Below, in pieces: positions 22,998-60,962 of a DNA stretch of 64,000 nt. Each line of letters starts with the position of its first letter. Within the stretch, counting starts at the first letter, position 1. The position numbers were made by a program, and so were the translations under genes. The notes below the pieces were generated by a model that saw only the letters and a list, made by a program, of their open reading frames with translations, ran no database searches and had not been told where the DNA came from. Location of the stretch: positions 1 to 64,000 of the forward strand of contig CALSCP010002018.1 of the NCBI GenBank assembly GCA_943704425.1. The letters are read 5' to 3'. This DNA is from Ministeria vibrans ATCC 50519 (lineage: Eukaryota > Protista > Filasterea).

Positions 22998-23016
22998 AAG
23001 AAACAAAGTGATAGAG

Positions 23017-23109
<93 letters not shown>

Positions 23110-24210: not shown

Positions 24211-24253
<43 letters not shown>

Positions 24254-24532: not shown

Positions 24533-24626
<94 letters not shown>

Positions 24627-25569: not shown

Positions 25570-26108
25570 CACTTCGTTCAACAGATCCCCGCGGCTATCT
25601 CGCCACGACCCACGATCTCACGAAAGGGTGACTTGTTTTGTGACGTCACCTCGTCGTTTGCCCTCTGAGCTGCAGGCGAGACCGGAGATCCCATTGCGGA
25701 CATTGCTCCAGTGAGCATCAACGTCAGGTGCCGGCTACAACTCTGTCGAACGTGTTTCTTTCGAGTGAATTTAGTGAGTGAATTTTTTTTTTTAAAAAAG
25801 TTCAAAATGATCGCGATCACAGGAACAAAAGTTCTTCTTTGCATTGCTTCACTGAATACTGATCACTCCAATTAAAAACAAATAGCACGGTAAAGCGCGT
25901 GCGGACGCCTCTGCTGCCTCCCCCTGCGCTGTTCTGCGCTGCCCTGCGCTGCGGTGCCCTCGCCGCAGCCGCCCCAGTCGCCTTGCGCTGTCGGCCACCG
26001 TGGCACCGTCCCTCCCCGCCCCCTCCGAGCCCCTCTCCCCGCGCCCCCCATCCAAACCACCCCACTCGACCCTGCATCTCCGCTCACGCGCCCTTCCCCG
26101 CCCTCTAG

Positions 26109-27229: not shown

Positions 27230-27803
27230 TCATGCAAAATCGGTGTCAATGGCAACGCAATGCTGCATGGCGTACTTGAGACGCACAACAAGCACGTCAA
27301 GGGAGTCGTACGGAGGCAGCATGACAAAGCGTGCGCACGTACTGCTCGTCGGCAGCGTATCGTTGGTCCCCGACATCGGCGCTACGCCAAACGACGCCGG
27401 CATGCGCCCACTGCCACACGCAAACTGCAGGAAGCTGCGCAGCTCAGCCTGCGAGAAGGTCTCCAGCGCCGCCCAGAACATTTTGATGAGAGGAGCACTC
27501 GCAGAGAAGCCACGGTACTCGGTGATGGAACGCAGTGCACGCACATTGATAGACACAATGCCAACAATGCGCGGCGACAGCTCAACACCCCGCACAAGCG
27601 AGATTGAAAACGCCGGAAGTACACTAATAAGACCCCGTCGCATCGCCTCCAGTTGCTTGTCAAACTGACCCACACACATCTACAAATCAAATCATAATAA
27701 GAAAATAATAGAGAATCGAGAGATTAAATAATAATAATACAAATAATAAACGTCTTAATAACATCAATAGTAACAATAAAATCAATAATAAATCAATAAA
27801 CAA

Positions 27804-27869
<66 letters not shown>

Positions 27870-30800
27870 TAATTTTATTATTAATACCTGCTTGGCCTTG
27901 GCGACATAGTCGAGACGGCTGTCCATGGTGACGGGAATGCGTGCGCCACCTGAGACTACGTCGGCAAGAGAACCGTCGCTTAGAGAGACGGTCATGTCGC
28001 AGTCAATAAGGTCGTCGGGCGAGAGCGCTCCCGCAATGGCCTGCAGTCGCTGCACCTCCGCCTTGTCGACGTTGTTGTAGTCTGAAAAGGTCACCTGCTC
28101 GCCACAAACTTTCTGCCACACAAACGTCGCAAAGTCGACGGGAAGGTACATCTGGTGGCGCAAACAGCCGCCCAGCATGCGCCCAATAAATTCAAACTGC
28201 GCCAGTTGCTGTGCACTGGTCGCGTTGACACGCGGCACAAACGCTCCGCCGTTAGGCGTCACGACCAACAAATCGCTTGCGGCACTTTGCAGGTCCAGTG
28301 CAATCTCCGAGAGCGACTCGCGAAACACACCGCCATAGTCGTCGGCCTTCTCGCCCTCAAAGCCCACCTTGAAAAACCCGCGTGGGTTGGAGCTGTGGAA
28401 GATGTGTGCGGGAAAGGCACCCGCCGCATTGAACACCTGCTTGAAGAAGCTCGAGTCGGAGTCCTCACTCGCAGGTTGCGCAAGGTAGCGCCGCGCCGCA
28501 ACACGGTCAATCGTAATGCGAGGCCGATCGTCCGCCTGCAGATAGTGAAACGTCACGCCAATCATCGTCTCGGAGAGACGCCAGCGCGTCGACACAAACA
28601 GCACGTCTCGAGCATACAGACGCACCGCACGGCTCCAGCGCGCCCGCACCGATCCCGTTCCATCCGCAAACGGAAGCACGCGTGTAATATCGCGCGAGAT
28701 GTACGCGAGCACACGCGCACGACGCTCCACCTCGGCAACACCCAATGGCAGCAGCTCGCGCGACAGGTCCTCTTCGCGCGCTTTAAAGTTGCCCTCGAGC
28801 ACCCACTCGGCTTCGTCGTCAGTTCCTCCGCCCTGCTTGGGTGCCTGCTCCCAGTCTCGCAGACCCGCCGCACGCGACGCACTCGACACGTACGTCGCAA
28901 TGTCGCGTGTCATCGCAGGTGTCCACGGATGCGCCCCGCCCGACGCCATCTGCGTCTTGGCCGACTCGTCGCGCTCGTGCGTCTCGTAAAACGCAATCAA
29001 CTGCTTCTCCCACTCCTTCGTCCCCGACGTATCCACCGCCTCGTAGCCATGCGGCACCGTCGGCTCCCGCAGTTGCTTTTGCTCGGTGACAAAGGCGACG
29101 GAACCGGCCGACGCATCGACACTCGTCACGTTCGCCGTCTCGCTCGTGCTCAACCCGACACTCTCCGTGTTGTCAAACGACATGTACGGCATCACGGCAA
29201 TGCTGTCCGTTGTAGGCCATAGCGAGGGACGGAGTGACAACGGCGATGCCAACGGACGTCCATTGCGCCGAAACTCGAGCGATGACCCCGTCACATTCAC
29301 CAGCACTCCAATCACATCGCCACTCTTCCACTCAGATGAGTCCACAAACGTCCATGTCATGGGTGTTTCATCATCTTCCGTCGCTGTGGTCGTCGACGCC
29401 GAAGCATCACCAACCTTGTCAGAGCTGCGAGCGGGCGACTTGCCCTTGCCCTTGCCCTTTGACGTGCTATCACCCACACTCTCAATCTTTTTCACAGCGT
29501 CACGCACATGCACCACCCTGCTCTCTTCTTCTTCCTCCTCCTCCTCTTCCCACTGATCATCATCATCATCATCCTCATTCTCATCATGATCAACATCATG
29601 ATCAACATCATTATCCTCGCCACCTTCCTTCTCCTTCTCCTTCTCCTTCTCCTCCTTCTCTGCCACCTCGCTCTCAATCTTGTCACGACTCCTGTCCTTG
29701 GGTGTACGCTGAACCAGCACGCCCACACACAGTCGTTGCAACTGCTTGCTGCTGGCTGTCGCCGACACGTGTATCTCAAAGTAGAATTTGCCCTTCTTTT
29801 GTGCCACGGCTGGCAGCGACAGCCGATTGCCCGCCACCAGGTCCATCTGTGTCTCGCTCTGCGGTGCGTCGAGACACCACACATTTGGCAGTCCCTGGCC
29901 CGTGCCCAGCTGCTCAAGCAAGTCGCTTGCTGCCACACACAGCGACAGTGCGCTGTCCGACGTGTCCAGCATCTCCTCGTCAAACTCCTTCCAGTTGAGA
30001 ATTGCCGAACTCTTCTTGCCCGTCTTTTTCTCGGCACGCGCCACAGTCGCAACCAGCGGTTGCTTCCACGCCAGCGACGCTCCATGGCACGCCACCATCA
30101 CCTCAGCGGCCGCAAGAAGCAGGGGCGAAGCAGCACGCAATTTGAACTCGCGATGGAAGTGCACGACAAACAGTGCGTAGATGTGGGCCATGGCTTGGCT
30201 CAGTTCAAAGCGCTCCGACTCGGGATATTCGTCGGCGCGCCCCAGCAACTCCACAAGCATCTTAAGAGCGACCACGCGTCGCTGTGCACAGTTCTTCTGA
30301 GCGGCATACACCAATGACAGCGTGAGGTTACGCGTGAGCACATGGGTGGCGCCTGTCTGTGACGCCTGCACCACAGCCAACACGAGCGCAGCGCCAACGT
30401 CAAACTGAAATGTCGGTCGACGACCCAACGGCAACTGGGGAGCAAGGTCACGGAAGACAAAAGGTCGCTCGCCCATGTTGATGCGAATGCGTAGGTGCTC
30501 GCCCGACAGCGACACCGTCGGCACCAGTCGTGTCTCCAGCATGTCGTCCTTGTCGCCCGTGATAATGCCGTTCTTTGTGAAAAAGATGCTGTGCGTCTGG
30601 GGATTCCATCCGCAGCCAATGGTGTCACCCACGTAGGAGGCTGCGCCGTTGCTCAGACCCGTGCCCGAGCCCGTGCTGTTGAAGTAGCCGCCGTCGTCGG
30701 CGTGCATCGCATACGAGCGCGGTGTCCAGCCCACATTCGTATTGGGCCCAAACCACATGGGTGCAAAGCCAATGGCAACGGTGCGTCCATTGGCGAACGA

Positions 30801-33800
30801 CGAACACGACAAAATGTCGACTTCGTAGTACTGCACTCCCTCATTCTCAAACTCCTCAGTTGCTTGCAAAATTGCAATGTTGTTCTGGCGGTCCACCACT
30901 TCGCCGACAAACTCGTAGACGTCGTTGTAGAACATGACGGGTGTCGTGTCGCAGTGGTAGGAGCACTCCATCATGGACAACCAGGTGCGCACCGTCGACG
31001 ACGCCGCCTGCTGCGCCAACAGCTTCGACTTGGTGCTCAGCATCGACTCTGCCTCACCCAACAGCAGTCGACTTAGCGGCACGTTCGCCGACGACTTGAG
31101 CAGACCTCGCACGCACTCCGCCGCCTGGCCAACACCCATGTAGGATTGTGTTGAGAGCACTGCAAGTAGACGCAGCAGAGCGCCGTAGCGCGACTCGGCA
31201 AACGACTCCGTGTCGGGCCAGTACGCCAAAATAGACTGGCACAGGTCACGAGCGACCAGTATCGCCGTTGTCATTTCGACAGCGCGTATAGTCTTCTCGC
31301 GCACCTCACCCGAGCGCAGGCGATTCGGCATGCTGTACACGTCGATCGTGTCGCTGCGACTGTGCGGCTTGGCGCTCTTGGATCGTCCACCGGACAGACC
31401 GGGAGCCGCAATGTCGTCGCGTTGCGACTGAATCTCAAACGTACCACGAATAATGCCCTCGGTGTGCGTCTCCTTGCTCAGCTGCCACTCGGGCTCGCGC
31501 ACGCTCTCACGCAACATCTCCGACGTCCACTTGACACCCGCTGTGTCCTCGTGGTCCAGCGACGTCGGCTTCCACGTCGCTTCTTGGTCCACCGTGTTCC
31601 ACACACTGTAGCGCGATTGGTCGCGGTCATCGCGTGCTACGTAGCCACCGCGGTAGTTGTTCGCGGGATCGAGCAGGTACGAAAAGAGCTTGCGCACATG
31701 CGTACGCAACTTCTCCAGATCACTCCCAACCACGTCGTAGGCATCCTGGAACATGGTGGGCGGCATCTTATACTGCCCTTGCACCGAGGCGAGGTAGCGG
31801 CGAACCTCGTCCGTCTGCGTGAGGTGCTGCTTGCGGTCGGGATCGTCGTCGTCCTCGTCCATTTCATTGCGCGCGCCGTCGCCGCAGTGAACGCCCGATC
31901 GCAGCAGCCAGCTTGCTTCGACCAGATCCGCATGACTGCGCTCGGCGCCCGTGTACGACGCATCGAGCGTCGCCAACAACAGCAGACTGTCAAGAAGACC
32001 TTCGCTCGCGAGAACGGCCTTAATGGCATCGTTGCGCGTCTCCTCCACGACCACAAAGTCGCATAGGGACGTCAGCGCCGCGTGTAACAATGAAGGGTGG
32101 CGAGGGGCGCCACAGCCGGTGTCAATGGTCGCCAAGATCGACTGCAACGACTCGAGAATCATGGGCAGGCGCATCGGGTCGGGCTGGCAGTCAGGCGCAA
32201 CACTCAGTTCGTCGGAGACGACCACGTTGACGTCAGACCCCGACGAGGAAAAAATGACAGACATCTTTCCGAGCAGCGGAGCAGTCGTCAAAATGGAGCA
32301 AAGACCATCGTCGTGGCCGTCCGACGGTCGTGCCTTGGCACCAGGCCGCACCACCAAAGATGAGGTACCCAGCAACTTGAGCCCGAGCCAGAGGCGCTGC
32401 TCTTCATCGATACCAAGTGTGTCGTCCTTGCTAAGACGCTCAACCGCCACAGCCGACGACGACGACGACGTTGCCTCGTGTGTGTTGGACGATACACGGC
32501 GCAGAAAACGGCCGAGCACAACACCAAAAGTGCCGCGCCAGTGATGCGCCTGTGCCATAGCACGGAGCAATCCTACTGCCGCGGCAATGCGACCCGCCTT
32601 GCTGTGCGACGGATCGGCAACGCGCGGCGACGTGAGCGCCACCAGCACCGACAGAGTGCGAAGGCCTTCCAGGCTCTTGCTGGCGCTGTCACTGGGCAGG
32701 TCAATATTGGACAGACCCAGCGCAGGATCAGGCCACGACACACCCCACAGACCGGAGGCGCCGCTCTTGGCAATCGCATTAAAGTCGGCCACGACCGCTT
32801 GATCGGCAGCAGCCGGTGAAACCTCGGCGCGTGGCAAGAGTTTGAGGAGAAGCCCAAGAGCGAGGTCGCGCACAGTCACCAATGACACGTCGCAGGTGCA
32901 GGTGACACCATTGAGCCGCTGACGCTCTTTGCGCGCTGCCGAGTCCGACGCAGACTCGGTGGCTGGCTGGCGTGTCACGACACCCGCGTACTGTGCACCA
33001 CTAGTCACAATCTCTTCAATGTCGTCGTCTTCGTCCTCCCACTGCTGGTCGTCGTCGACGTCGGCCCTCTCGTCCATGTCTTCGAAACTCGCTTCGACGG
33101 GCGATCCGTGTGACAGGACCACACGCAGTGCAGCAAAGAGCACGGCAAGACGAGCCGGTTCGCGCGCCAGCAGGGCCGCCACGAGTGACGGAGCACTGTC
33201 AAAGAGTGTGCCAAGGTGACACAAACATGTGGCCGCCTCGCGCCAGGGGAACTCGGGCTTGCTCAGGAGCGACGCGGACGTCTTGGTCGAACCCAAGTCA
33301 CAGCCGGGCAGAATCTCTGTGACGTCGGAGAGTTTTACGGACGTCCCGCCGCCCGTGATGGACAGGGCAAGACGCGCGACGGTGATGCGCACCACATTCT
33401 CCAGAGTCGCCTTGGCGACGGGGGCGTCGCTTTGGTTTGCGTGCAGCGCTGCCATCCACAACATCGACTGGCGCAGCGAGTGAAGCGGAAGCCAATCAGG
33501 CGTCGCCGGACGACCGTACACGGTCAGCTTGCCCACGTCGAGGTTGTCCTCAAAGCGCTTGGCGGGTGTTAGCAGTAGCAGCGTGACAAAACTGCCGAGA
33601 CGCGGACGATCGAGGCCCATCGAGATGAACTTCTTCATCTTGGGCTTTTCCTGGCCACCGTCCGTGTCGCTTTCGGGCACGCCAAAATCAAAAAAGGCGC
33701 AGGGCAGGTGTTGTGTTGAGTCAGCCGGGTCGCACGAGCGCACCAGTTGGGCGTACTGTCGTTTGCGCATGTTCCAAAAGTGGAACAGCTCATTCGACTC

Positions 33801-36800
33801 GGGCGGGAGGCTCGACACAAAGGCAAGTGCGGTGCGCAGAGGCGACGTGTACGAATCGTCGACATTACCCAGACGGATGCGAGTGATCCACGAAAGGGGC
33901 TCCTCGACGCGGAATGTAATGCGAATGTTGCGTTCTTTGTAACGGCCCGTCGAATAGCACTCCTCTGATGACATCCCCACCACATTTTGCGGTCCAAAAT
34001 CCGGCGCAAACAGGTAGCCATCGGTGTCATGCAGTACGAGACGAAGCTTTCGCGACGACCCTTCCTCCTCTTCCTCCTCTGTTTCGTCCTCGCCAGTGTC
34101 CTTGTCGTCACTGTCTCCATCCTTGTCTACATCCTCGCCACTCTCGGCTTCCTTCGCCTTCGCCTCCCTCTCCTCATTCTCTTCCTTCTTGGTCTTGTTT
34201 TTGGTGTCGACGCCCTCAATCTTGTCCTCCATCACATTCGGACTTTCGCTCTGTTTGACAGCGAGCAGTGCTGCAAAGTCAAGGTCAAGGGTGATTTCAA
34301 AGTCATCGGGCGACAGCTCGGTGCTGATGACGCGGAGCAAACTGCCACGCTCCTCAAGGTCAGTGCCAACACGCAGGCGGTGAATGAGCACCGAAAGAAG
34401 GTTGTGCCAGGCGGTGCGCACGTACTTGACGGTGCGCTCACCGCAAGCCGCAAGGTAGAAGGCAACGTCCGCGTCGCGCGCCACATCCTCTTCCTTCTTC
34501 TTCTTCGCTTCGGCGCCCTCTGACTCGTCCTCCAGCGAGAGCACTTCATCCAACAGCGCCGCACCCTTGCAACACATCGATTTGAGATAGACACTCGTCG
34601 CCCTGTGACTCGACACCTTGGACAACACCCGATTGGCAACGTCAAAGCCCCAAGCCTTGCGCAAGCCCACATTGCGGCGCTCCACCACCGAGCTGCGCAG
34701 CTTGCCAATGTTCGCGTTGTCGTCAAGCACAAATTCGCTAATGATTGACGCATCAATGCCACTTGGGTGAGGCTCTTCGCCAATCCGCGTGCCGTGCAGC
34801 AGCGCATTGGCCGAGCGCCACACATTGGAGAGTTTGCTCCAGCCGCTTCCCTTCGCACTTGCACCCGCCGATGGGTCGACGAGACGCGACGATGACAGGC
34901 GGGAACCTACAGCGAGCGATGCAGGTGTACTTGGTGGAGCAGCAGCAGATGCAGCGGTGGCGGCGGCACCAGCGGCAGCAGGAGCCACGGCCGGAGAGGA
35001 AGGGAACACAAACGGATTGGGTGTGGCCGAGTGGCGAACTTGAGCACTGCCAGGCTGAGAAGCGGGTGCCGGCGTCGGAGTGGGCACCGAGGCAGGATGG
35101 GCAATGGCCGCGGGCAAAAGAGTGAGCAAAAAGAGAGCACGACGACGAATTTGCACAAGCATCGGCGAGAGTTGTACACGTGCACTTGTGGATGCACCCG
35201 ACGAGCCACCCGCCTCGCTGGCGGACGACTCTTCGCCGGAAATCATGGATGAGCTTTGACGCTGGAAAACACGACGCCGCAGCACAGCGGCATCATCATT
35301 GGCAGGAGGAGCGTCAGCGCCATCATCATCAGCAACAGCAGCAGCAGCAGCAGCAGCAGGAGTCGTAGTCGACATGGCGGCAGCCGTAGATGCTTCAGGG
35401 TCGGTCGAGGTCATCATGGCGAGCAAATCGTCGAGGTCATCTTCACCCTCGTCGGCGGCCATTTCCGAAGCATCGTTGTCACTCAGGTCAACCAGTGCGT
35501 TAGAGGTGCTCTGGCCACGCGGTTGTTGCTTAAGACGCAACTCGGCACGGTGCATTGTCGCCTTTTTGAAGACACCCCCAAGCGACGAAGGAATGTCGTT
35601 GGTGGAGCAAACTCCTCGTTCAAGAGCGTCGGCTGCATCGTAGCACTCGTGTGCGAGGCCCAAATGCCAAATCATTGCTGCAAAGATGGCAGACAACACC
35701 GAGTCAACGGCCTGGTCGACACGCGTGCCAAAACTTGGATGCATGGGGCGGTACTTGGTCGCAAGCATCTTCTCAAAATCGCGCTTGTCGCCACGCGCCA
35801 GCGCCACAATGAAGGCGGCAATGTGAGGCTCGACAGCAGCACTGTCGCTTGACGCCTCCACCGGCGCATTGACATTGTCATCGTTAGTCTCCTTGGTTGA
35901 GTCGAAGGATGACGCCTCGCTCAGAGCCTTGTTGAGACCTTTACGTGTGAAGCCTGCGCTGAAGAGGGGCGATCGTAGCCAGTGAGCTGAGGCGCCGTGT
36001 TCGGTGACGAGCGGCGCGAGGGCGACGGACGAGAAGAAGCCGAGGATGCGGGCGACAGCAAGTTGCACGTCGACGGCCCAGGGCACAATGGGCACGCTTG
36101 TGGCGTAGTGCGCGGTGACGTTGACCTTGTAGCCCCAATTGGAGGAGTCGTCGGCAGAGGCACGGAATGTAAAGTTGAGACCATTGGCATTGTCAATGTG
36201 GTAGGGCATGGCGGGAAAGGTGTTGTCGACAAAGTCGCCAGTGTACTGACCACTGCTGCCAAAAAAAAAGTGCTCCAAATCGGAATTCTCGTGCGTTGTG
36301 ACGCGCAGACGGTCCAGTGGACCTTTGGTGTTGCAACGCGGGTCAAACTCGAGTGTGAAATGCGTTGCACCTGGACACTCAATGTCGCGGCTCGACAGTG
36401 AATTGGGCGCGTACGGATGCTTGCTTTCAACCACAAAGGTACGCGTCGAGTTGATAATGGTTGCCTTGGGCGTATCGGCGTCGGCGGCAGCATCAGAAGC
36501 AGAGGCGCTTGCATTGAGTTCGTCAAGGGCCACAAGCAGGTCGGTGAGGTGAGGCGCAATGGTTCGTGCCACAGAGCGATTCGAGTGCAGCGCGGAGTCG
36601 AGCGAGCTGACAAAGTGCACAACGAGGCGTCCGACCGACGACTCTTCAAGCATTTGCAGGGCCACCTCGCGATTGGGCAATTTGGAGGCGAGTTGCGTCA
36701 GTGTGCGACTGTGGCGACACAGAATCTCGCCATACTCGGTGATTAGAAGCGCACCCGTGGCCGGCTCAGCAATGTCCTTAGCCCACGCACACATGGCAAG

Positions 36801-39800
36801 CTGGAGAGCCTCGAGAACGTCGCCGACAATGGAACGCCACGGAGTGGACTGAGATGAAGTGGCGGACGAATCGGAGGTAGGCGACTCTGCCGAGGGTGAT
36901 TTGGTGATGGTGGGGCTGCTGGCGGGAGTGGTGCTAGAACTGCCACTGGCATTGTTCTGGGCGCTGTCGGCAGTCGATGCGTGCGAGACAAAGGCGGTGC
37001 GCTCCAGGTCAAAGAAAGCACGCACAGTGCTCAGCTGCGAGGTGAAATCTTCGACTGTGGTGTTGCGATCGTTGACGGGGAATGCAAGGAGACGCATTGC
37101 ACCGGCGGTGGTCCGATGGTCAGCAAGTACGGCGTGGTAGCGCAGACTCTGCGCTTCGGTAAGGGGATCCTGACTTTCCTCAGTAGCCGAACGAATGGAG
37201 GCCAGCAGCAGATTTGAGCGCAAAAGAGGCGTGGGATAGGCGAGGGGAAACGAGGAGGCAAGGAAAGCGGCGGCCGCGGCGTAGATGTCCTTGTCCGTCG
37301 ACTCGTCAACAAGACGTTCAGCGGTGGCGCGTGCGCGGTCCATAAAGCCCGCCTGACCACCGTCGGCAAGATCGAGCACATGCGCTGCTGCCATGGGGCC
37401 ATCGAATTCACGCAAAATCATGCGAACGTTGACAGTGAGCAAGTTAAGGGTGACAAGCGTGTTCGCGTAGCTTTGGGGTGTCGAGGTGCTTGGGTCACGC
37501 CAGGTGTCGGCGGAGCGACTAAGAATGTGCGCGAGCTGCACAATCATGCCGGGATTGGGGTCAAGGAAGATGCTTGGCGAGGACTGGAGGGCCAGACGTG
37601 TGCATAGAGTGCCGCCAATGTCCCAGTTTTCGTCGCGCGTCAGCGCTGCAAGTCGACCGGGAACGGCAAGGATCATGGTGGCCGCAGTGATAGGCTCCAC
37701 CTTGCGGGTGCGACTAGACGCGGCGTCAACAGTTGACGCTTCCAATGAATGGACACGCTCAAAGGCAACGTCGTGAGCGTGCAGCGCACTGAAGGTGCCA
37801 GTGAATGCGTTGGGCAGAGTGGCGCAGGTAGCGAGGAGACGTTGCGAGTCGGTGGGTACCAGTAAGAGACCGGTGTCGTGCAGACCACACAGCGTGATAC
37901 GATCCATGCCCTTCTTGTCGTAGACGAGCGTCTGACCAAGCGAGCGACCGTCCTCGAGCGAAAAGTTGAGCAGCATACGAATGGAAGTATCGTCGTCGAC
38001 GTCTTCGCCAAGAACCGTAGCAAGTGCTTCGGGCAAAATGGCCTCAGGCGGTGCAAAGAGAGAGAGCACCTTGCCGGCCGAGTAGAAGGTCACCTTGTCG
38101 AGCTCGTCGGTGTTGATCTGAAGGGGCCAGTCAGTGTCCTGCGACGTGGCGGTAGCATACGCGGCGGCACGTGCCAAGCCAGCTGGCGACAAATCGTAGC
38201 ACCACTGCGAGAGGCTCGCAGCCTCACCGCGACACACGACTCCGTGGGCATTGCTTGGACTCGAGTCGCGCACTAGAACCCCACGCCCCTCATTGAGCGG
38301 CCAGCAGGCAACGACGCCTGGCTGCGAGCCAGTGGCAAAGCGCCGGCTGTCGCGCAGCACGTCGGCTGCCGAACGGGCAACCTTCCACACGGCGACGTGG
38401 CCAATAGAGCCGTGGAATCCGGCGCCAATGCACGACACGGAGGTACTGCGCGCACGTTCGACAAGTTCGACGCCACCGGAGCTCTCTGTGGTGGCACCTG
38501 CGACAAGGACTCCGTTGCGATAGAGTGACCAAGGGCTGTCGGGGCCCTTGGAGACGGCGGCCCAGTGCACCCAGCCGCACAGCTCGGTTTCGGCCGTCGA
38601 GGCGAATCGCAGCGCCGAGCGACCGTGCGTGCTGTTGTTGCGTTCGGCGCCCACAATGAAACCCTTGATCTCGAGGGAGAGATCACGATGACGAAACACA
38701 GTCGCCGTGTGCGCTGACGCGGACGCGGCATCGAAACGCAGCCACGCCGAGATGGTGATGGGTCCGCGCGAGAGCGTGTCTGGCAGACTCGCGCCGTTGA
38801 AGCGCACAAAGTTCTTGGACTCACCCGTGAAGGTGTAGCCTGCGGCGGCAAGTGACGGATCGGGCGAGGTGCCCACGTCGGGAGCGGTGATGCGGGACGG
38901 GATCAACGACAAACTGCGTTCGTCGGTGAGATGCGAACCGCCTGGGCCAGTGCGGGGCACAATGCGCATGACAGACACGTCGGTAGGCTTCCACTGGAGT
39001 GCCCAGGCGGCAAGACCGTCGCCGACAATGCACAGAAGAGAACGGTCGTGAAGATCGAGGCCCCCGATGTTGCTGAGGCTCGACGGGTTGTGCACCGAGA
39101 GAATTTTGTCGCGCGGCTGCAGACGATAGAGAAACTCGCCGTCGAGTGCCAATGTTGTGTTGGGGTCCACGTCGAATTCTTCGTTGACACGCGCCTCGTC
39201 GTCGACATGGGCGGTCGTCGAGCTGCCGAGACGTACTGAGATGAGACCCTGAGTGGCAGTGACGACAAAGGCGTCGTGCCCAAGGGACGCAATGGCGAGC
39301 ACATCGTGAAGCGGGTGTGACAGCTGCCACTGGCGCAGGGTGGGATCCCAGGGCGAACGAAGAGGGGCATACGCTGCCTTGCGCGCAAACTGATGGAGCG
39401 GCTCGGTGAGAGCCAGACGAGACTTGGACGAGGAGGTGGCGGCGGAGGCTGAGGAAGGGGCGTTGCTGTTGCCGGAGTTTGTGGTGAGCAAGAGGGATGC
39501 GACGCTGACCAAGTCGCGAAGACGACCACGCACAAGAGCAAGACGCACACTCTGGTCGAGTGCACCGGTACTTGCAAGGAATAGAGCCAGTTTGTCGAGC
39601 ATCTCGTCGGAAGGCAGCGGGGTGGAATGAGTGCGGCCAGGCATGGCGGACGACGACGACGACAACGCAAACGAGTGTGGGGCAGACAGAGCACGGAGCC
39701 AGCGGGCCGTCAGCGCATGAAGGTGGCGCAACATCTTGGGGTCCACTTGGTCAATGGTGGTCTGCTGAAACAGCATGGTGAACGCGAGCTCGGCTGAGAA

Positions 39801-42800
39801 GGCATCCGTCGAAAGGGTGGATGTATCTGTGTCGCTGTCGCTGTCGTCCGAGTCGTCGTCGTCGTCACCACGTGTCTGCTCTGTCCCTTTACCGGAAGAA
39901 GACACACCACTGCCAGTCGCACCGCTAGCCGTTGTGGCAGTGGATGAACTTGCGAGTGTTTCGGCCGTCGAAACGAGCTCCTTGACGACAGCGGACGCGA
40001 CATCGTTGGCCACCTGTGAGCGGCGGGTGGCCAGGTCCTCGTACGCGCCAATGTCGTGTTCTGTGTTGAGCGAGTCAACATGAAGCATGTCGCGCAAGCT
40101 GTGGAGCTCGTCGGCAATGCGTGTACGGCTCTTGGTGGTGTGTACCGCCGTGGGGTCGACAAAGACGGGCTCGAAATTTTGGAAGAAATGTAAGCCACGC
40201 AGGGGTTCGAGTCCATCGGCGTCCTCTGCAAGAAGAGTCGTGTCGAAGAGACGACGCATGGAGAAGGACGAGGCGACGGGTTCTTTGGCGCCACCAATAG
40301 CGTGCAGCGTGTGACGACGACGGCGTTGTTGCGAATCATTGTGTCGACCCGAACCACTGTCAGAGTTGCGCTGGCGCGAGGAGGAACGCTGCTGCTGCTG
40401 TTGTTGTTGTTGCTGCTGCTGCTGTCGAGACTGCGCACCACTCTCGCTGCGGGTGCTGTTGGTGCTGTCCTGACGGCGGCGTTGCTGAGTGGGTCCGCCG
40501 TTGCCCGACGACGCAGTACGATTCCGACTTCGACCGGTCCTTGAGTCTCGCGAAGCCCCATCATCATCATCGTCATCATCATCACCATCACCATCACCAT
40601 CATCATCATCGGCATCGTCGTCGTTGTCGTCATCGTCGCCAGCCCCGCCGGCGTCGTCCTCCTGCCCAGCACGCCCGTTGTTGCTGTCATCGCCGTTCGC
40701 TTCTGCGCGATTGGTCGTCCCTTGGCCCTCGTCGTCGTCGTTGTCCCCGCCTCCTTCGCTGTTGGACATCACTACGCTAAGCACCAACTGTACGATTGAA
40801 AAGCGGAGGTTATCAGTGAAAGTGGGATATGAAAAAGGTCAAAAAAAAAACGAGAAAAAAAAAAAAAAAAAAAAAAAAGAGTAACGTACAGTACACTCGT
40901 TCAGTGCTGCTGCTGTCGCAGTTCGCTTCTCAGACAGCTCTTGCATATTTGACTGTATCACAAAAGAGAAACAAAAATTGAGCACAGACCTCTCCTCTCT
41001 CTCTCTCTCTCTCTCCAACACGTCTTTTTTCTTTCCCCATCACTTTGTATGTACTCCCTCCTTTACTTTACCTTCAGATTGGACTCGCATAGATATCTCT
41101 CATCTTCAAGCAACACAATGCTCTCCTTGAGACGGTAGTTCTCAGTGAGCAGTGCGACTCGCTCATCAGTGTCGCTCTCCGGTTTGCTCTCGTGCGACTG
41201 ATTGTGGCTGTGCGAGTTGTTGGGATTGTTGTTGCTGTGTTGGTGAGGGGGGTTGTTTGAATTGGAGGTGTCTGTGCTGGCTTCCACCAGTGCCTCCCGG
41301 TCCCGACGGAAGTGGTGCTCGCCGCGTGCACGGTAAAAGTCCACTTGACGCTCTAACCTGCGCAGCGAGTCGATCATCTTGGCTTCGTTTCCTGCAACAA
41401 GCACTGGCGGCTCGCCCACCGACTCGTACTCCCCGACAATGTCTGACAGGCGCGCCAGTGTTACTGCAAGCTCACGTGACACCGCGTACGCCTCGGCAAG
41501 CGCCGCAATCGCCACATGGGCATCATCCGGTACCATCACCACGCGATCGCCCAGCACCCCACCACTACTACCACCACCCGCGCCACCACCAGACCCACTC
41601 GACGACGCACTGACCATCATCGACACACTGCGCCCTCCTTTGTCCTTCTTGTACAGCGACCCTGTCTTACTAGCCCCAGTAATGCCTCCTCCACTTGCAC
41701 TGTGGCCACCAACACTACTACTGATCGAGTAGGTTCCACCAGCATTGCGCACGGCAATCTCCGTGTCGCGCACACTCACTACCTCCTTGCCACCAACCGA
41801 CTTGCGCACAGGCTTCCGTCGTACCACACCATCCTCTTCGACAACAACACGCCCGCGCACAGCATGATGCGTCACATTCTGCGTCGACTCCACCACATCA
41901 ACCCCAAACTGGAATTCGTCGCTCGTCGTAAGCTCCACCGCTTCGCTCACTTTAAGCGACTCAGCCAGTCGTCGCCCGTTCACAAACGTCCCGTTGCTAC
42001 TCTTTGTGTCCCGCACAAACAGCCGTGCATCTTCAATCCACAGCTCAGCATGAGCTCGTGACAACACTGGAGGGGAAAAGATGTGTGTCAATATAATTAT
42101 TATAATTATAATTAAAAAAAATTAATAAAGAACACAGCTCATAATTACAATAATAATAATATAAACAAGAGAGTTGGACAATTCATTGCAAACGAAATCA
42201 TTTATACCTTTGCTGTCAAACATGGCGTTGTCTTCGGCCGGTTTGGGCTTGCCTACGCTCCGACCCACTTTGATGATTTGCTGTGGTCGGAACTGAAGTC
42301 GGCGTGTCTGAAAGGCGCCCTCATCGCGCGGCTCAAGATAAATGACAAGGGCGGAGGGTGAGTGAGTCGGCGTGGATACTTCTTCCTTGGGGATCGTTGG
42401 TGGAGTGACCAGCGGAGTGGCCGCCGGGGCATTCTCCGCCACGGTGGCTCGTGCGGCAGAGATGCCCGTCGAGGACAACTCGTGGGCTGTGGCAGCGGGG
42501 TCTTCTTGGAGTGTGGCAAGCGAGGCAGAGCGCTCGCGTCCGGTCTCACAGTCTTCGCTGGTAGTGCGTGTCTGCGTGTCGCTCTCAGAGCTCTCGCGTG
42601 GCTCATCTTCGGTTCGGTCTCTGTCGTCGCCGCCGTCTACACCAAAGGGCGTCGACTCGCCATCGGGGATGGGCGTTGATCCTGGCTCTATGTGGACGTA
42701 CGGCGTCAGCATTGGCAATTCGTTCAAACGCGCGATAGGAACAGGAGAGACGGAAAAACACATCCGAATCTACGAATCTTGCAGTACGGAAAAACGTCGC

Positions 42801-43301
42801 CCAGGGCAAAAGGGAGGAGAATGCCAGAGAGAAACGGGGCCAGACCATCGGTTCAGTACAAAAAAAAAGCATTTGGACGAGCAACAAAAAAGGAGGTCCA
42901 CAGACGCAGGATGCCTGCTTGGGGTGGCGGGGAAGCATCAAGAGAGCAGGAGGGTTGTGTGGGGGCGGGATAGGGGCGCGACAGGGGACGAGAGAGACAG
43001 AGAGAGACAGAGAGAGAGAGATGAAGTTGTGACTTTGGGACTCCTTTGCATCATTGCCCAAAGCAAAGGAGGAGTCCAAGCACCACTGCAGCAAAGTGGA
43101 GGAGGGAGAGGGCGGAGGGGAGTGAGGCCTGCGGCGACGCCCCCAAGCGAGTGCGTCACTTGCTCTACAGCCCGTCAACTTTGACGTGGCCCTTTTTTTT
43201 TCCTCTTCCATTCTGTCGAAAGCCCTCATACCTGCACTCTGAGTGGTGTCGTCCATCCGAGATACTCTCAAAGGGGGCGGTCGAGCTAATCGAGAGCTCA
43301 T
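27230..43301 (-). CDS. Giant (~4985 aa) HECT E3 ubiquitin ligase: SLMAP-type FHA + coiled coil, LamG-like, CUB-like, SPRY x2, HERC-type HECT; exons 43232-43301, 42208-42687, 41072-42066, 40890-40952, 27888-40787, 27230-27679
   Basis: HECT: FEGEKADDYGGVFRES, FLQFACG..R, LPTSSTC, AIDTD. SPRY: YYEV..IGF..SYAMHADDG..GDTIGCG. CUB-like: ESKHPY..LEFDPRC. FHA: VGRS..NAMFDSKVLSRAHA..DTKSSNGTFVNG. The HECT and FHA parts are each high confidence; their joining is inferred from in-frame splice sites. Confidence 0.75.
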
Positions 43302-49000: not shown

Positions 49001-51640
49001 TGAAGGATGTCGTCCTGCAGTGTGCGCACGGCGTTGATACGCGCGCGGATGGAGTCACGAAGACGCACTGATTCTGGGTCAAGACTGCGCTTTTGGAGCA
49101 TCAAGCGGAAGACTGGGTCGTTGCGTTGCTGCGCGAGAAGACGCGCTTCTTCGCTGCCCGACAGACCCTTGAAGAGCTCTTCGGTAAGCGAGTCCATGTC
49201 TTCGCGCAGCGACTGTACATTCTCCTGAAGACTGCGGCATTCCGTAGCGAGCTCAGCTGTTTCGCGTGCTGTCGCGCGCGCCTTGGCGTTTAGTTCAGCA
49301 ACCGTCTCGCCACTCTTCGAGCGAGCTGTGCCGTCGCTGCCGACAAGCTGTCGCAGTTGATCGAGCTCGCTCGAGAACTCTCTGACCTCCTTTTCAATCT
49401 GGGCCAGTGCTTTCGCCTTGACAGTTGAGGCAGAAGAAGAAGAGGAGGAGGAAGAAACAGCGGTGGTGGGAGCAGGTGCTTTTGTGGTGGGCATTGCTGT
49501 GGTGGGTGTTGCAGTTAGTGGAGCAGCAGGTTTGGCGGGGAGTGCAGCAGCGCTTGGGGTTGGAGCTGCTGCAGAAGATTGGGGGGTGAAAGGAGCACCA
49601 GTGGCGACGGTGCTGATTGGTGTTGTGGTGCTGGGTGCAGGGGTCACTTTGGGAGCGGTAGGCATTGACTTGAGTGTCAGAGGAGCGGACGCTGTGTTTG
49701 CGGTGGTGGGCGCTGCTGCGGGTTTGAACATAAAAGGAGAAGAAGTTGTGGCTGCCACCGGTGCGGCTGCTGCCTTCGTTGCGACCGGCGCTGCTGCTCC
49801 TGCTGCTCCTGCTGCTGCTATTGGTGTTGTTGTTGTTGTCGTTAATGATGATGCCGTGGTTGGTTTGAAAGAGAAGGAAGGCGCGGAAGGAGTTGCAGTC
49901 GTCGTTGCAGTGGCGGCGGGCGTTGCTGATAACTTGAACGCAACGGGAGGCGTCGCAGTTGCCGTCGTCGCTGTTGTCGTCGGAGTCGACGTGGTAGGCT
50001 TGAACGTAAAAGGAGCGGGTGTGGAGGGAGTTGTTGGAGTGACAGTGCCGGTAGTCGGTTTGAGTGAGAGGGAAGGCGAAGCAAGAGGTGCAGCTGCGGT
50101 TGCTGCCGTCGCTGGCTTGATTGCGGATTTTTCAGGGGGCGTGGGAAGGGGCTCAACGGCCGCAAGCATGTTAGGGTACTTGCGAGCGGCGTTGACACAC
50201 GTGTCAACCATGGAAAAGACGGAAAGAGTGTCGTTGGAGGTGAGCATGATGAGACGGGGCGAAGGAGGACCGGTCGCCATGACAGACGGGTCGGCGGGCG
50301 ACGGGAACGAGATGGGTTCGGAGGCAGTGTAGTCGATGGCAAGACCCACTGTGGTCGACATGCGACTGTCTGTTTCGTCGGGAGACACGTACATGACAGC
50401 GGTCGCCTGGCCCGTCTCGGGCAACTCCCATCTCTCCCAGAGAAGTCCGTCGGTGCTCTTGCCCAGCACAACCACATCTTGCGAGTCGTTGTGCGCGAGC
50501 ACGACCACGGGCCAGTCGCGTGCACACACGGCGTGCACATAGTCGGCCTGCGTCGAGCCAAAGTCTTTGTAGAGAACATCCTCGAAATGGAAGTACTCTT
50601 GCTTGTCGTTGACCTTGTGCAAGACGCAAATTTTAGGATTGGGCAAGTCGTCGTCGTTGTCGTCGTCGTCGTTGCCGTCACTCTTGTCGGTGGGGCGTGC
50701 TTTTTGGCCATCTGATAACACCGGCGTGGTGTAGGCGACGGCAAACGAGTAGTTGCTGATCCACTGGATGGCGAGGACGAGGGGTGGAGGCCCTTCAAAC
50801 TCGGGTGCGGAGTAGCGCGTTTGAAGGACAAATCCGTCGCGAAACGTTGTGAGCGATCCATCGCGACAGCCACACACATACTGCGATCCTTTGGGACTCC
50901 AGTCGACGGCAAGAACGGGTGCAAGCGTCGCTGGGGAGCGCATCAAGTGAGTGCACCCGCTGCCAGTGACACTCTCCCAAGTGTCGGCAACCCCATCGGC
51001 CGATGCCGTCACAATGTAGCCCGACTTGGCCACGTGGGGGTTCCACTGGAAGGCAATGAAGGTTGACGCACGCGGATGGGCCAGACGAAAGCGCGGCTCG
51101 ACTGTGGCGCCGTCGGCAACGCGTGCCAAATCGCGCAAATCCACAAAGAGAATCTCACCGCCCGCCACCACTGCAATGGTGGTCTGATCGGTCGACAGAT
51201 GGATCATCGTGGGCGTTTCGGTGGTCTTGGGCAGCCCGGCGTGGACGAGCGACGCAGGCAAAGTGTACGTCTGGTTTCAAAAAAAAAAAAAAAAAAGATA
51301 AACGANNNNNNNNNNCAGTCGTCGAGGCGTAAGTATGCGCCGGGCAAAGATTAACAAACAAACGAAAAAACTTACACGAGCACAAATTGAAAGAAAAGCC
51401 TCTGGATTAATCTCACGGACCTGGAGCAACTGATCGCGTCTCTCGGACGGCATAGACTGCAATGGTAAGGGGGGAGATCAGGGTGAGTGAGGGTGGAGAG
51501 AGACGAGAGACGGCTCAGCGAAGAGACGCGAACATTACGGCTATGATTGAGCGTGCGGCGTGGTCGAAGTCGACGCCACCCGCCTCAAGCATCGCAATGA
51601 TGTCCTGCGTCGAAGGACCTCCGTCCTCCTCGTCAGACAT
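46084..51640 (-). CDS. NUP214: Nucleoporin Nup214/Nup159-like (beta-propeller, coiled coil, FG repeats); 5' exon boundaries approximate because of a gap
   Basis: WSPKGSQYVCG propeller; central helical region (RSLDPES..R..IR); C-terminal PAFG/GGFG/SFG repeats ending FSQRR. Confidence 0.85.
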
Positions 51641-54677: not shown

Positions 54678-55549
54678 CTACATATAATATGTATACATTC
54701 CGGTCTCTTTGGCCTCTCCAGCGGCAAAGCGCTCTGCCCACTTGTGCATCTCGGCGATGGACGCTGTGTCCTTGGCACACGACGCACTCACCTCCTTCAT
54801 GGCCGAGATAAAGTCCTTCTGCTGCAGCGGACGCAACGGTACATCGTCGCTCGCATTCTCTTCTTCATCATCGCTGATCAGCAGAGCATTCTTCTCACTC
54901 GCGCGGTGGTAGCCACCCTTGGTTGTGGCAGTACTCTCCTTGGGCGTCTCCACCACCCCACCCGCTGCTTCCTCACCACTACCACCACCCTCCTTCGCCT
55001 CTTCCCGTTCTGCCTTCTCCTGCGCCAGCTTATCCTTAGCGGCCTTCTCTTCGGCAGCAAGCAGTTCACGAATCGGCTGGTAGGCAGCGGCAACACACAC
55101 ATTCTTTATGTCACTGCCACTGTAGCCATCCAGCAGCCGCGCCAGCTCAGCCAAGTCCACCGAGGCCTCATCCACACACTCATGCCGCAACACCACCCGC
55201 AAAATCTGCTCTCGCTGCTCCACATCAGGCAGGTCAATCAACACTCGGCGCGGCATGCGACGCAACGCAGCCTCGTCCAGGTCAAACGGGCGATTAGTCG
55301 CTCCCAAAATCACCACTCGCTCACTGTTCTTTGTCGTCATTCCATCCCACATGGTCATAAACTCATTCTTAATCTTCCGCATGCCTTCGTTCTCATTCGT
55401 CGAGTCCCGTCGTCCCAAAAGACTCTCAATCTCATCTAAACAAAATACCAAATATCGGAGTGAGGAGGAAGAAAGATACAAAGTCATAGAGAGAGGAGAA
55501 AGAAAGAAAGTAATACAGAGAGGAGAAAGAAACGAGTGATGAAGAGTCG

Positions 55550-55591
<42 letters not shown>

Positions 55592-55702
55592 AATAATAAG
55601 AAAAAAAATTATGATAATAATAATAATAATAATAATAACAAAAAAAATAATAATAATAACAATAATAATAATAATAATAATAACAATAATAATAATAATA
55701 AT

Positions 55703-55738
<36 letters not shown>

Positions 55739-56351
55739 AATTTAAATTACCAATGAACACGACGCAAGGAGATATTTTGCTGGCGAGTGTGAACACGGCT
55801 TTAGCGGCCTTCTCGCCTTCACCCATCCACTTGCTGGTGACGGCACTCATCGAAATGTCTACAAACAGAACAATGTCATAATTGAGCACATACAAAAAAG
55901 GAAAAAAACAGCATACTGAGAAAGTTTGCGCCACTTTGAGAGGCCATAGCCTTGGCAAGCATAGTCTTGCCGGTGCCCGGAGGACCAAAGAGAAGAATGC
56001 CCTTGCAAGGCTTGGTAAGGTTGCCGCGACGGAAAAGCTCGGGACGCAGCAGCGGCAGGATGACGAGCTCGTGAAGAAGCGTCTTGACCTTCTGTAGTGA
56101 TCCAATGTCGTCGAAGGAGACGCCAACGTCGTCACGCATGATCACATTGGAGAGCAGTGCCTTTTCGTAGGTGTTGTCGCACTCAATGTCCAACGGGCAC
56201 TTGATGCGCGTGTCGTTTGCCTTGCTCTTCGCCTTCTTGGTGTCCGACGCACTCAGGCGCATCGGCGCACTCACCGCCTTGAACGTCGCCAGGGCACGCT
56301 GTACATATACAAACGGAAGCACACCCATTCCGGAAACAGATGTCACAGGAT

Positions 56352-56388
<37 letters not shown>

Positions 56389-60931: not shown

Positions 60932-60962
<31 letters not shown>

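What the first reader, a model, noticed from the sequence alone, without database searches (positions are those of the whole stretch)
40700..43301. SLMAP-type phospho-reader (FHA + coiled coil) fused in frame to a giant HECT ubiquitin ligase
Seen: the FHA (IKVGRS..EDNAMFDSKVLSRAHA..DTKSSNGTFVNGRRL..FQFGVDVVE) and the following coil (LEDERYLCESNLK|SNMQELSEK) resemble SLMAP. Phase-0 GT-AG introns 40953-41071 and 40788-40889 join them with no stop to the first codon of the 4366-aa ORF. There is no room for a separate promoter, and SLMAP's long coil and tail anchor are absent. Known: SLMAP/Far9-10/Csc1 FHA recruits phosphorylated Hippo/GCK kinases to STRIPAK-PP2A; known FHA E3s (Dma1, CHFR, RNF8) use RING, not HECT. 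Inference: an undescribed phospho-dependent HECT ligase coupling Hippo/SIN-type signalling to ubiquitylation. It is divergently transcribed from cyclin B.
Basis: partly seen in the sequence, partly recalled or inferred. Interest (0 to 1): 0.82.

Follow-up and report, generated by a model that had tools for sequence, protein, structure and literature searches.

The report
SLMAP adaptor fused to giant HECT ligase
In this protist genome the only copy of SLMAP (the phospho-threonine reader that brings Hippo-type kinases to the STRIPAK phosphatase complex) has lost its long coil and membrane anchor. It most likely splices in frame into a ubiquitin ligase of about 4,450 residues, a domain combination I found nowhere else, but no transcript data confirm the last splice.

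Summary
On the minus strand lies a genuine SLMAP-type module: an FHA domain with every phospho-threonine contact residue, the SIKE-binding CC1 coil, and the start of CC2. Right behind it lies a class-I HECT ligase (Laminin_G_3, CUB-like, SPRY, complete HECT with its catalytic Cys).

New evidence concerns the link. The position was placed by a weak but non-random alignment. So the SLMAP gene does not end at the TAA at 41063.

The first AG after the conserved donor is at 40788, and it joins in frame to 4,300 open codons.

The genome has striatin, SIKE and STRIP genes. Searches of it found no other SLMAP-like sequence.

None of the 150 best FHA relatives among 1.84 billion representative proteins exceeds 1,567 aa.

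What is missing is transcript evidence. No close relative exists in the databases to test conservation. Intron-4 retention, an alternative acceptor or an internal promoter could still give separate proteins.

I put the fusion at about 0.7. The Hippo-to-ubiquitin coupling is inference. An overlapping window of this scan noted the same idea earlier.

The parts
42208..42763 (-). SLMAP-like exon holding a low-complexity N-terminus and the first third of the FHA domain (...IKVGRSVGKPKPAEDNAMFDSK).
   Evidence: The SLMAP profile matches positions 16-48 and ends exactly at the exon end. BLASTP to Capsaspora CAOG_07007 residues 6-53 gives E=3e-9. The Arg that corresponds to human SLMAP R32 is present.
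42067..42207 (-). FHA intron, 141 nt, phase 1, 22% GC, GTATAA...TCCAG.
   Evidence: The profile match is contiguous across it: positions 48|49. Sequence read. It is not at the position of the Capsaspora/Clytia FHA intron.
41072..42066 (-). Exon holding the rest of the FHA domain, a Gly/Ser-rich linker, the CC1 coil (SIKE-binding region in human SLMAP) and the start of CC2, ending ...LLEDERYLCESNLK.
   Evidence: Pfam FHA. PDB 6ar0 SLMAP FHA, E=1.1e-13. CC1 profile 12.9 bits with 0 of 3000 shuffles as high; animals-only profile 5 of 3000. Exon-end match to the motif that holds the conserved YExxAK residues: 25 of 5000 shuffles.
40953..41071 (-). Intron 3, 119 nt, phase 0, AAG|GTAAAG...TGATACAG|. 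If it is not spliced, the ORF ends KVK-TAA at 41063.
   Evidence: By the weak motif alignment it falls at the same residue (the conserved Lys of YExxAK) and has the same phase as the intron FEFSAK|EMIRK of Capsaspora (L010 7707-7795) and YESAAK|ETLQK of Clytia.
40890..40952 (-). 63-nt exon, SNMQELSEKRTATAAALNECT.
   Evidence: Same length and phases as the 63-nt exon of Capsaspora (L010 7796-7858) and Clytia (L011 3080-3142). Aligned exon to exon against 21 orthologues it scores 8.1; residue shuffles reach this with p=0.012 and random 21-mers of the window with p=0.0017. Codon usage is uninformative.
40788..40889 (-). Intron 4, 102 nt, phase 0, ACT|GTACGT, then T24-CTCG-T10, then a CTGAT branch-like site 25 nt before the first AG (CAG at 40790-40788). 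If retained, the protein ends ...NECTVRYSFFFFFFFFSFFF-TGA.
   Evidence: The donor position is conserved with Capsaspora and Clytia. There is no AG between the donor and 40788. GTACG-type donors and T-runs near 3' ends occur in the G-beta introns of the same window. Read-through translation.
27888..40787 (-). Giant exon of 4,300 codons, with the first ATG at 40769. It holds an acidic/poly-Q disordered stretch of about 330 aa, then Laminin_G_3 (residues 668-810), a CUB-like 'ESKHPY' domain (about 1450-1560), SPRY (3320-3434, and a second matched stretch) and the HECT N-lobe (from about 4180).
   Evidence: Pfam Laminin_G_3 6.7e-10, SPRY 4.7e-14, HECT 4.2e-15. Blocks shared in the same order with a 4,866-aa PH-SPRY-HECT protein.
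27680..27887 (-). HECT intron, 208 nt, phase 0, 12% GC, CAG|GTATTA...TTTGTAG|.
   Evidence: The HECT profile runs on from position 153 to 154 across it. Sequence read.
27230..27679 (-). Last exon: rest of the HECT domain with the catalytic Cys (LPTSSTCARFVMLPPY), stop codon TGA at 27232-27230.
   Evidence: Pfam HECT E=1.1e-31, profile positions 154-300 of 306. Best solved relative HECTD3, E=2.3e-24, with the SSTC motif aligned.

Best explanation
This is one gene of about 15.5 kb on the minus strand, encoding a protein of about 4,990 residues.

The N-terminus is the genome's only SLMAP orthologue. It has an FHA domain able to bind phospho-threonine, the CC1 coil that in human SLMAP binds SIKE1 and so docks onto striatin-PP2A, and the first part of CC2.

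After an ancestral 63-nt SLMAP exon, the ancestral phase-0 donor at 40889 is spliced to the first downstream AG (40788). That joins it in frame to an acidic/poly-Q linker of about 330 residues and then a class-I HECT ubiquitin ligase (Laminin_G_3, CUB-like, SPRY, HECT). The rest of SLMAP (long coil, tail anchor) has been replaced by the ligase, probably through a rearrangement inside that phase-0 intron.

Likely mode of action (inferred): the FHA-CC1 head either tethers the ligase to STRIPAK, or delivers pThr-marked clients (in animals, autophosphorylated MST/GCK kinases) to the HECT active site. Phosphorylation, dephosphorylation and ubiquitylation would then be coupled in one assembly.

Shown: the domains, the conserved exon structure, frame continuity, and the presence of STRIPAK core genes. 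Inferred: use of the 40788 acceptor, the existence of the fused protein, and every functional step.
For: SLMAP identity:
- FHA closest to human SLMAP (6ar0, E=1.1e-13).
- Named top relatives are animal SLMAPs and Capsaspora CAOG_07007.
- The SLMAP profile gives 95.5 bits.
- The residues that contact pThr and the +3 position in human SLMAP (R32, S52, R53, H55, S75, V107-D108-V109; PMC5663475) are all present in the alignments.
- CC1 is retained (E=9e-6, 0 of 3000 shuffles). CC1 is the SIKE1-binding region (PMC6323126).

The gene goes on past the TAA at 41063:
- Taking the Lys of CESNLK as the conserved Lys of YExxAK (weak alignment), the phase-0 intron after it, the following 63-nt exon and the next phase-0 donor coincide with Capsaspora and Clytia.
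- The exon peptide resembles the orthologous exon (p=0.012 and 0.0017). The other 63-nt candidate in the region scores -34.

The join: the first AG after the donor is 40788 and continues in frame for 4,300 codons. The next two AGs give an early or immediate stop. The donor type and T-run resemble real introns of the same window.

Ligase: the HECT domain is complete and has its catalytic Cys.

Genome context: no other SLMAP-like locus, no second haplotype contig and no coil/tail-anchor remnant were found in the assembly. Striatin, SIKE and STRIP genes are present.
Against: - There are no transcripts, ESTs or peptides.
- There is no close relative: the best hit to the FHA exon in 1.84 billion representatives is 45% identical and not orthologous. 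Conservation of the join therefore cannot be tested.
- The placing of intron 3 at the orthologous Lys rests on a weak alignment of the exon-3 end (4.4 bits; 25 of 5000 shuffles of the last 30 residues).
- Exon 4 alone is weak evidence. A free HMM search gives 2.9 bits, which 8% of shuffles reach. Its codon usage is neither coding-like nor non-coding-like (likelihood ratio 0.6). A 63-nt AG|open|GT candidate appears in 21.5% of dinucleotide shuffles of the region.
- Nothing after the junction resembles SLMAP: one search gives no hit, and the best offset (p=0.006) does not survive 24 tests.
- An ATG lies 6 codons into the big exon, and the genome is very compact, so an internal promoter in or near intron 4 is conceivable.
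- None of the distant HECT relatives found carries an FHA domain.
- The junction holds a T24 run and a GA repeat, which are places where assemblies can go wrong.
Confidence: 0.7

Rival explanations
1. Two proteins come from one locus. The SLMAP gene includes the 63-nt exon but ends just after it. This could happen by retention of, or polyadenylation in, intron 4 (C-terminus ...NECTVRYSFFFFFFFFSFFF). It could also happen by use of the TAG acceptor at 40772, which gives ...NECT-TGA with the stop overlapping ATG 40769. The HECT ligase would then be made separately from ATG 40769, from an internal promoter or by reinitiation. Both forms could also coexist with the fusion as isoforms.
For: ATG 40769 lies 6 codons into the big exon with a purine at -3. 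Read-through of intron 4 meets a TGA after 16 codons. Alternative AGs lie 11 and 16 nt downstream. The genome is compact, with gene ends 60-120 nt apart. No HECT relative found has an FHA domain.
Against: The donor at 40889 is at a conserved intron position and is of a donor type common in this window. The first AG is normally the one used, and here it is a CAG about 25 nt after a branch-like CTGAT. Only about 70-120 nt would be left for a terminator, a promoter and a 5' UTR. A pure T24 run is unlikely to be maintained as coding sequence.
Confidence: 0.2
2. Two ordinary neighbouring genes. The SLMAP-like gene stops at the TAA at 41063 (…CESNLKVK), the 294 bases to ATG 40769 are intergenic, and the splice path is a chance finding.
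For: The stop follows two codons after the proposed donor. Splice signals in this genome are loose, and almost any shuffle of the region offers some in-frame exon path (4969 of 5000).
Against: The ORF would end in the middle of a motif conserved in SLMAPs, at the residue where (by the alignment) Capsaspora and Clytia have a phase-0 intron. The next 63 bases match the orthologous 63-nt exon in length, phase and, weakly, sequence.
Confidence: 0.05
3. Assembly artefact. The contig wrongly joins the 5' half of SLMAP to an unrelated HECT gene at the GA repeat or the T24 run.
For: A low-complexity repeat that recurs on other contigs lies in intron 3. The assembly is fragmented into 2,860 contigs and the window has N gaps elsewhere.
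Against: There are no Ns between 40700 and 43300. No other contig carries SLMAP-like sequence or a second copy of the junction. Unique sequence flanks the repeats on both sides.
Confidence: 0.05

Closest known systems
SLMAP / Far9-Far10 (Vps64) / Csc1 / HAM-4: the FHA adaptor of the STRIPAK complex
   Same: An SLMAP-type FHA with all pThr-contact residues. A CC1 coil at the same relative place. The conserved YExxAK region. A 63-nt exon flanked by phase-0 introns, as in Capsaspora and Clytia. It is the only such gene in a genome that also has striatin, SIKE and STRIP.
   Different: It has about 110 extra low-complexity residues before the FHA. The FHA intron is at another position. The long CC2/CC3 coil and the C-terminal tail anchor are missing and, in the preferred model, replaced by a HECT ligase of about 4,450 residues.
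Class-I HECT ligases (HERC1/2, HECTD3, HECTD4/KIAA0614, and the protist families HECTHe1/HECTEx1 with Laminin-G3 + SPRY and HECTAm1 with PH + SPRY; PMC3673628)
   Same: Giant size, SPRY, Laminin_G_3, and a HECT domain closest to HECTD3 among solved structures. The CUB-like, SPRY and HECT blocks lie in the same order as in a 4,866-aa PH-SPRY-HECT protein.
   Different: The N-terminal 1,300 residues have no detectable relatives. None of the relatives found, and no family described in the 2013 survey, has an FHA domain or SLMAP coil.
FHA-RING ligases (Dma1/Dma2, CHFR, RNF8)
   Same: The same logic of a phospho-threonine reader attached to a ubiquitin ligase.
   Different: Those are small RING ligases with an unrelated FHA subtype. 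Here the catalytic domain is HECT (thioester-forming), and the FHA is the STRIPAK adaptor type with its SIKE-binding coil.

Membership tests
SLMAP family (STRIPAK FHA adaptor) | N-terminal FHA domain of the SLMAP subtype with pThr-binding residues (human R32, S52, R53, H55, S75) | tested here: met
   PDB best hit 6ar0, E=1.1e-13. SLMAP profile 95.5 + 26.2 bits over exons 3 and 2. The residues are seen conserved in those alignments; the residue list comes from PMC5663475.
SLMAP family (STRIPAK FHA adaptor) | CC1 coiled coil that binds SIKE1/FGFR1OP2 (human residues 167-226) | tested here: met
   Sequence level only. BLASTP to the Capsaspora CC1 region, E=9e-6. CC1 profile 12.9 bits, 0 of 3000 shuffles; animals-only profile 5 of 3000. 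phmmer against the PDB does not find 6AKM. Binding was not tested.
SLMAP family (STRIPAK FHA adaptor) | Long C-terminal coiled coil (CC2/CC3) | tested here: not met
   Homology stops after the 63-nt exon. There is no SLMAP match in the next 60 residues or elsewhere in the genome.
SLMAP family (STRIPAK FHA adaptor) | C-terminal tail-anchor transmembrane helix | tested here: not met
   None in the fused reading. Only an artefact-like poly-Phe tail of 14 residues appears if intron 4 is retained.
SLMAP family (STRIPAK FHA adaptor) | Orthologous gene structure (phase-0 intron after YExxAK, 63-nt exon, phase-0 intron) | tested here: met
   Capsaspora L010 7707-7795 / 7796-7858 / 7859-7966 and Clytia L011 3080-3142, against window 41071-40953 / 40952-40890 / 40889-.
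SLMAP family (STRIPAK FHA adaptor) | Physical membership of a striatin-PP2A complex | not testable with these tools
   Partner genes exist in the genome: Striatin 4.1e-18, SIKE 1.5e-5, N1221/STRIP 1.1e-34.
HECT E3 ligases, class I | Complete HECT domain (N-lobe and C-lobe) | tested here: met
   Pfam HECT profile positions 22-153 on the big exon and 154-300 on the last exon, E=4.2e-15 and 1.1e-31.
HECT E3 ligases, class I | Catalytic cysteine in the C-lobe | tested here: met
   LPTSSTCARF aligns with LPESSTCSST of HECTD3.
HECT E3 ligases, class I | SPRY domain upstream of HECT (class-I hallmark in PMC3673628); Laminin_G_3 in the HECTHe1/HECTEx1 families | tested here: met
   SPRY 4.7e-14 (two stretches) and Laminin_G_3 6.7e-10. 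No HECT phylogeny was built, so assignment to a named class-I family is open.
FHA-RING ligases (Dma1/CHFR/RNF8) | RING finger as the catalytic domain | tested here: not met
   No RING family appears in the Pfam scans of the exons. The resemblance is an analogy of logic only.

The most novel reading that the evidence does not exclude
The STRIPAK adaptor has been converted into the targeting head of a giant HECT ligase. In this lineage STRIPAK would then carry its own ubiquitin ligase, or the ligase would read the same phospho-marks on GCK/Hippo-type kinases that STRIPAK erases. One polypeptide would couple kinase autophosphorylation to PP2A docking and to ubiquitylation. It would be the first HECT ligase found with a built-in phospho-threonine reader.
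Probability: 0.35. Interest if true: 0.75.

Novelty: new variant of a known kind. Interest (0 to 1): 0.62.

Why it matters
SLMAP is the arm of STRIPAK that recognises autophosphorylated Hippo kinases. HECT ligases usually find substrates through WW, SPRY or similar modules, and the known ligases with an FHA domain use RING.

A natural fusion of the SLMAP head (FHA plus the SIKE-binding coil) to a HECT ligase would be a 'Rosetta-stone' hint. It would suggest that STRIPAK signalling and HECT-mediated ubiquitylation act on the same clients, and this can be tested in animals and fungi, where the two parts are separate proteins.

It is also a clean example of exon shuffling through a conserved phase-0 intron, in a protist whose HECT repertoire appears unusually inventive.

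If the transcript evidence fails, what remains is a truncated SLMAP without an anchor next to a large HECT gene, which is of modest interest.

Tried and rejected
- Word-index protein searches with the giant ORF, over its whole length and over residues 440-1340. They found only distant HECT/SPRY/LamG hits, none with an FHA domain and no orthologue.
- A third word-index search with an INTS2 ORF of the same genome, meant to place the organism. It returned nothing, so the lineage stays unidentified. Adhesion-GPCR, tetraspanin and SLMAP exon structure point to Holozoa or close kin.
- A brute-force GT-AG/ORF intron finder on the window. It was too noisy to train a splice model. Donors read by hand from the G-beta gene are loose (GTACGN, GTGCGN, GTAAGA and others), so a weight-matrix score would discriminate little.
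- Codon-usage log-odds for exon 4: uninformative, and the undoubted end of exon 3 scores even lower.
- A free HMM match of exon 4: not significant against shuffles. Only the exon-to-exon comparison is.
- A search for SLMAP remnants in the first residues of the big exon. 'VVMSNSEG' against 'RSLSNTED' gives p=0.006 at one of 24 offset/length combinations; I treat this as a lead only.
- A search for a second haplotype contig: none.
- The weak CUB-like match on contig C1900 turned out to be a MYCBP2/Highwire-like protein, not a HECT paralogue.
- ESM Atlas look-alikes of the N-terminal region: only generic Laminin_G_3 clusters below 0.9.
- A SARAH-domain search for a Hippo kinase: empty but without a positive control, so uninformative.
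- The local Pfam copy lacks PF27557 (CC1_STRIPAK), so CC1 was tested with a profile built here.
Every search was done exon by exon, so no search or fold of the full fused protein was made.
Full report
**What is there.** All features lie on the minus strand between about 42763 and 27230. Reading 5' to 3':
- an exon ending ...AMFDSK (to 42208);
- a 141-nt AT-rich intron (42207-42067, phase 1);
- a 995-nt exon (42066-41072);
- a 63-nt exon (40952-40890);
- a 12,900-nt exon (40787-27888);
- a 208-nt intron of 12% GC (27887-27680);
- a last exon (27679-27233, stop codon at 27232-27230).

The '4366-aa ORF' of the finding is the big exon read on into the last intron.

**The N-terminal module is SLMAP.**
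- Pfam finds FHA in exon 3 (E=1.5e-10).
- The best solved relative is the human SLMAP FHA domain (6ar0, E=1.1e-13), followed by yeast Vps64/Far9.
- In an exhaustive HMMER search of 1.84 billion representative proteins, the relatives that carry names are animal SLMAPs, Capsaspora CAOG_07007 and fungal FHA proteins.
- A profile of 14 orthologues matches exon 2 at profile positions 16-48 and exon 3 at 49-118. The match is contiguous across the intron, which validates that intron.
- The residues that hold the phosphate and the +3 residue of the MST2 peptide in human SLMAP (R32, S52, R53, H55, S75, V107-D108-V109; PMC5663475) are all present in those alignments.
- Further on, exon 3 retains CC1, the coil that binds SIKE1 and thereby docks SLMAP on striatin (PMC6323126). 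BLASTP to the Capsaspora CC1 gives E=9e-6. A CC1 profile gives 12.9 bits with 0 of 3000 shuffles as high, and an animals-only profile is reached by 5 of 3000.
- Direct phmmer against the PDB does not recover 6AKM, so CC1 is divergent.

**Does the gene stop at 41063?** This was the main rival at the start: unspliced, exon 3 ends KVK-TAA.

The end of exon 3 (...LLEDERYLCESNLK) aligns with a motif conserved in SLMAPs (...LQEDKxxYExxAK|ESLRRVLQEK...). The match is weak (4.4 bits), but only 25 of 5000 shuffles reach it. The ORF would therefore end in the middle of a conserved block.

I fetched the Capsaspora gene and mapped its exons. It has a phase-0 intron exactly at FEFSAK|EMIRK (L010 7707-7795). 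A 63-nt exon follows (7796-7858, EMIRKAIEDKQEVDRRCLDLE), and then another phase-0 intron (7859-7966).

The cnidarian Clytia has the same arrangement: YESAAK | 63-nt exon ETLQKILQEKIEVLQKCSDLE | RLLSNTEDEC.... A transcriptome-derived Clytia protein contains the spliced sequence.

The window has CESNLK | 119-nt phase-0 intron | 63-nt exon SNMQELSEKRTATAAALNECT | phase-0 GTACGT donor.

Length alone is not rare: 21.5% of dinucleotide shuffles of the 284-nt region offer some 63-nt AG|open|GT candidate. But the real candidate, aligned exon to exon against 21 orthologues, scores 8.1. Residue shuffles reach this with p=0.012 and random 21-mers of the window with p=0.0017. The only other 63-nt candidate scores -34.

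Taken together with the donor at the orthologous Lys, I consider intron 3, exon 4 and the donor at 40889 real and ancestral. Weaker tests agree or are silent: a free HMM search of exon 4 gives p=0.08, and codon usage gives a likelihood ratio of 0.6.

**What follows exon 4.** There is no AG between the donor and the CAG at 40790-40788. This first AG lies about 25 nt after a CTGAT branch-like site and behind a T24-CTCG-T10 tract. It continues in frame into 4,300 open codons.

The next AGs, at 40777 and 40772, would give a stop after 29 codons or at once. In the latter case the TGA overlaps ATG 40769.

GTACG-type donors and T-runs before acceptors occur in the G-beta introns of the same window, which I read by hand. 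If intron 4 is retained, the protein ends ...NECTVRYSFFFFFFFFSFFF.

Nothing after the junction resembles SLMAP. One offset gives a weak 'SNSE'/'SNTE' echo that does not survive multiple testing.

**The ligase.**
- The big exon carries Laminin_G_3, SPRY and the HECT N-lobe.
- The last exon carries the rest of the HECT domain (E=1.1e-31). The catalytic cysteine aligns with that of HECTD3, the best solved relative (E=2.3e-24).
- A 4,866-aa PH-SPRY-HECT protein shares the CUB-like, SPRY and HECT blocks in the same order.
- In the 2013 survey of HECT ligases, SPRY marks class I, and Laminin-G3 plus SPRY marks two protist families. FHA is not mentioned there (PMC3673628).
- The first 330 residues or so of the big exon are acidic, poly-Q and Ser-rich, that is, a linker. 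Residues 440-1340 have no detectable relatives.

**Genome context.**
- The assembly is 29.7 Mb in 2,860 contigs.
- Searches with exon 3, with the SLMAP profile and with the whole Capsaspora protein hit only this locus. I found no separate full-length SLMAP and no stray coil or tail-anchor piece. Coiled coils are poorly conserved, so this is a soft negative.
- No second haplotype contig exists.
- Striatin, SIKE/FGFR1OP2 and STRIP (N1221) genes are present, so a STRIPAK core is expected.
- A SARAH-domain search was empty and had no control.
- In Capsaspora the gene downstream of SLMAP is CKS, not a HECT gene, so the juxtaposition is not ancestral.
- The window is compact: convergent genes end 60-120 nt apart.
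- Neighbouring genes (adhesion-type GPCR, tetraspanin) and the shared SLMAP exon structure point to Holozoa or near kin. I could not name the organism.

**Is the combination known?**
- Among the 150 best relatives of the FHA-CC1 exon, none exceeds 1,567 aa.
- None of the HECT relatives retrieved lists PF00498.
- Full-text searches found no FHA-HECT ligase.

This is absence of evidence within these tools, not a survey of InterPro.

**Verdict.** The fusion model is now the best-supported reading (about 0.7) because the gene demonstrably runs on through an ancestral exon to an ancestral donor, and the first acceptor after that donor opens the ligase frame.

It remains unproven. Intron retention, an alternative acceptor or an internal promoter could give separate proteins (about 0.2). 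A simple stop at 41063 (about 0.05) and a misassembly (about 0.05) are less likely. The mechanism, a phospho-reader and STRIPAK-docking head on a HECT ligase, is inference from the known roles of the parts.

**Limits.** An overlapping window of this scan had already noted the same fusion idea (s1-762055). That is the same DNA and is not independent support.

Noticed in passing
window 10137-15713 (+): An 1,858-codon ORF with Receptor L domain, GPS motif and a secretin-type 7TM: an adhesion-GPCR-like receptor in a protist.
   Followed up: no
window 54678-61653 (-): A giant gene with an FHA domain near the N-terminus and a C-terminal AAA ATPase. The AAA domain is split between two overlapping ORFs, by an intron or a frameshift.
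   Followed up: no
window 46023/46084 and 27115/27230: Convergent genes end only about 60 and 120 nt apart (cyclin against the Nup214-like gene; the SSR2-like gene against the HECT gene). Their 3' UTRs must be very short or overlap.
   Followed up: partly
window 40990-41069; 23000-23300; 24500-24760; contigs C486, C1356, C2383: A dispersed GA-rich minisatellite ('caaagtgat...gagagag') sits in intron 3 of this gene, in G-beta introns in the opposite orientation, and on other contigs.
   Followed up: partly
G000:C1900:5494-19818 (+), loci L012/L014: A 4,775-codon ORF with an RCC1-like domain, PHR domains and SPRY (MYCBP2/Highwire-like), sharing a weak CUB-like match with the HECT protein. An INTS2 gene follows at 23365-26808.
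   Followed up: partly
window 40767-40772 (-): If the TAG acceptor at 40772 were used, the SLMAP frame would stop at once, with TGA overlapping the ATG of the HECT frame (TGATG). This is a termination-reinitiation-like arrangement and is probably coincidental.
   Followed up: no
window 42067-42207 versus L010 6205-6516 and L011 684-943: The FHA intron of this gene (phase 1, at FDSK|VLSR) is not at the position shared by Capsaspora and Clytia (after GK, before F). Introns have turned over in the FHA region while the 63-nt exon stayed.
   Followed up: partly
window 15713-15800 (+): An enolase-phosphatase (ENOPH1-like...VVLLDIEGTTTPISF...) ORF begins within about 100 nt of the GPCR stop, across a short N gap.
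   Followed up: no
window 51279-51296 (-): A T18 run, just after an N gap, directly precedes the 1,725-codon Nup214-like ORF. It is followed by ...aaccag|, which looks like a 3' splice site with a long pyrimidine tract, as in intron 4 here.
   Followed up: no
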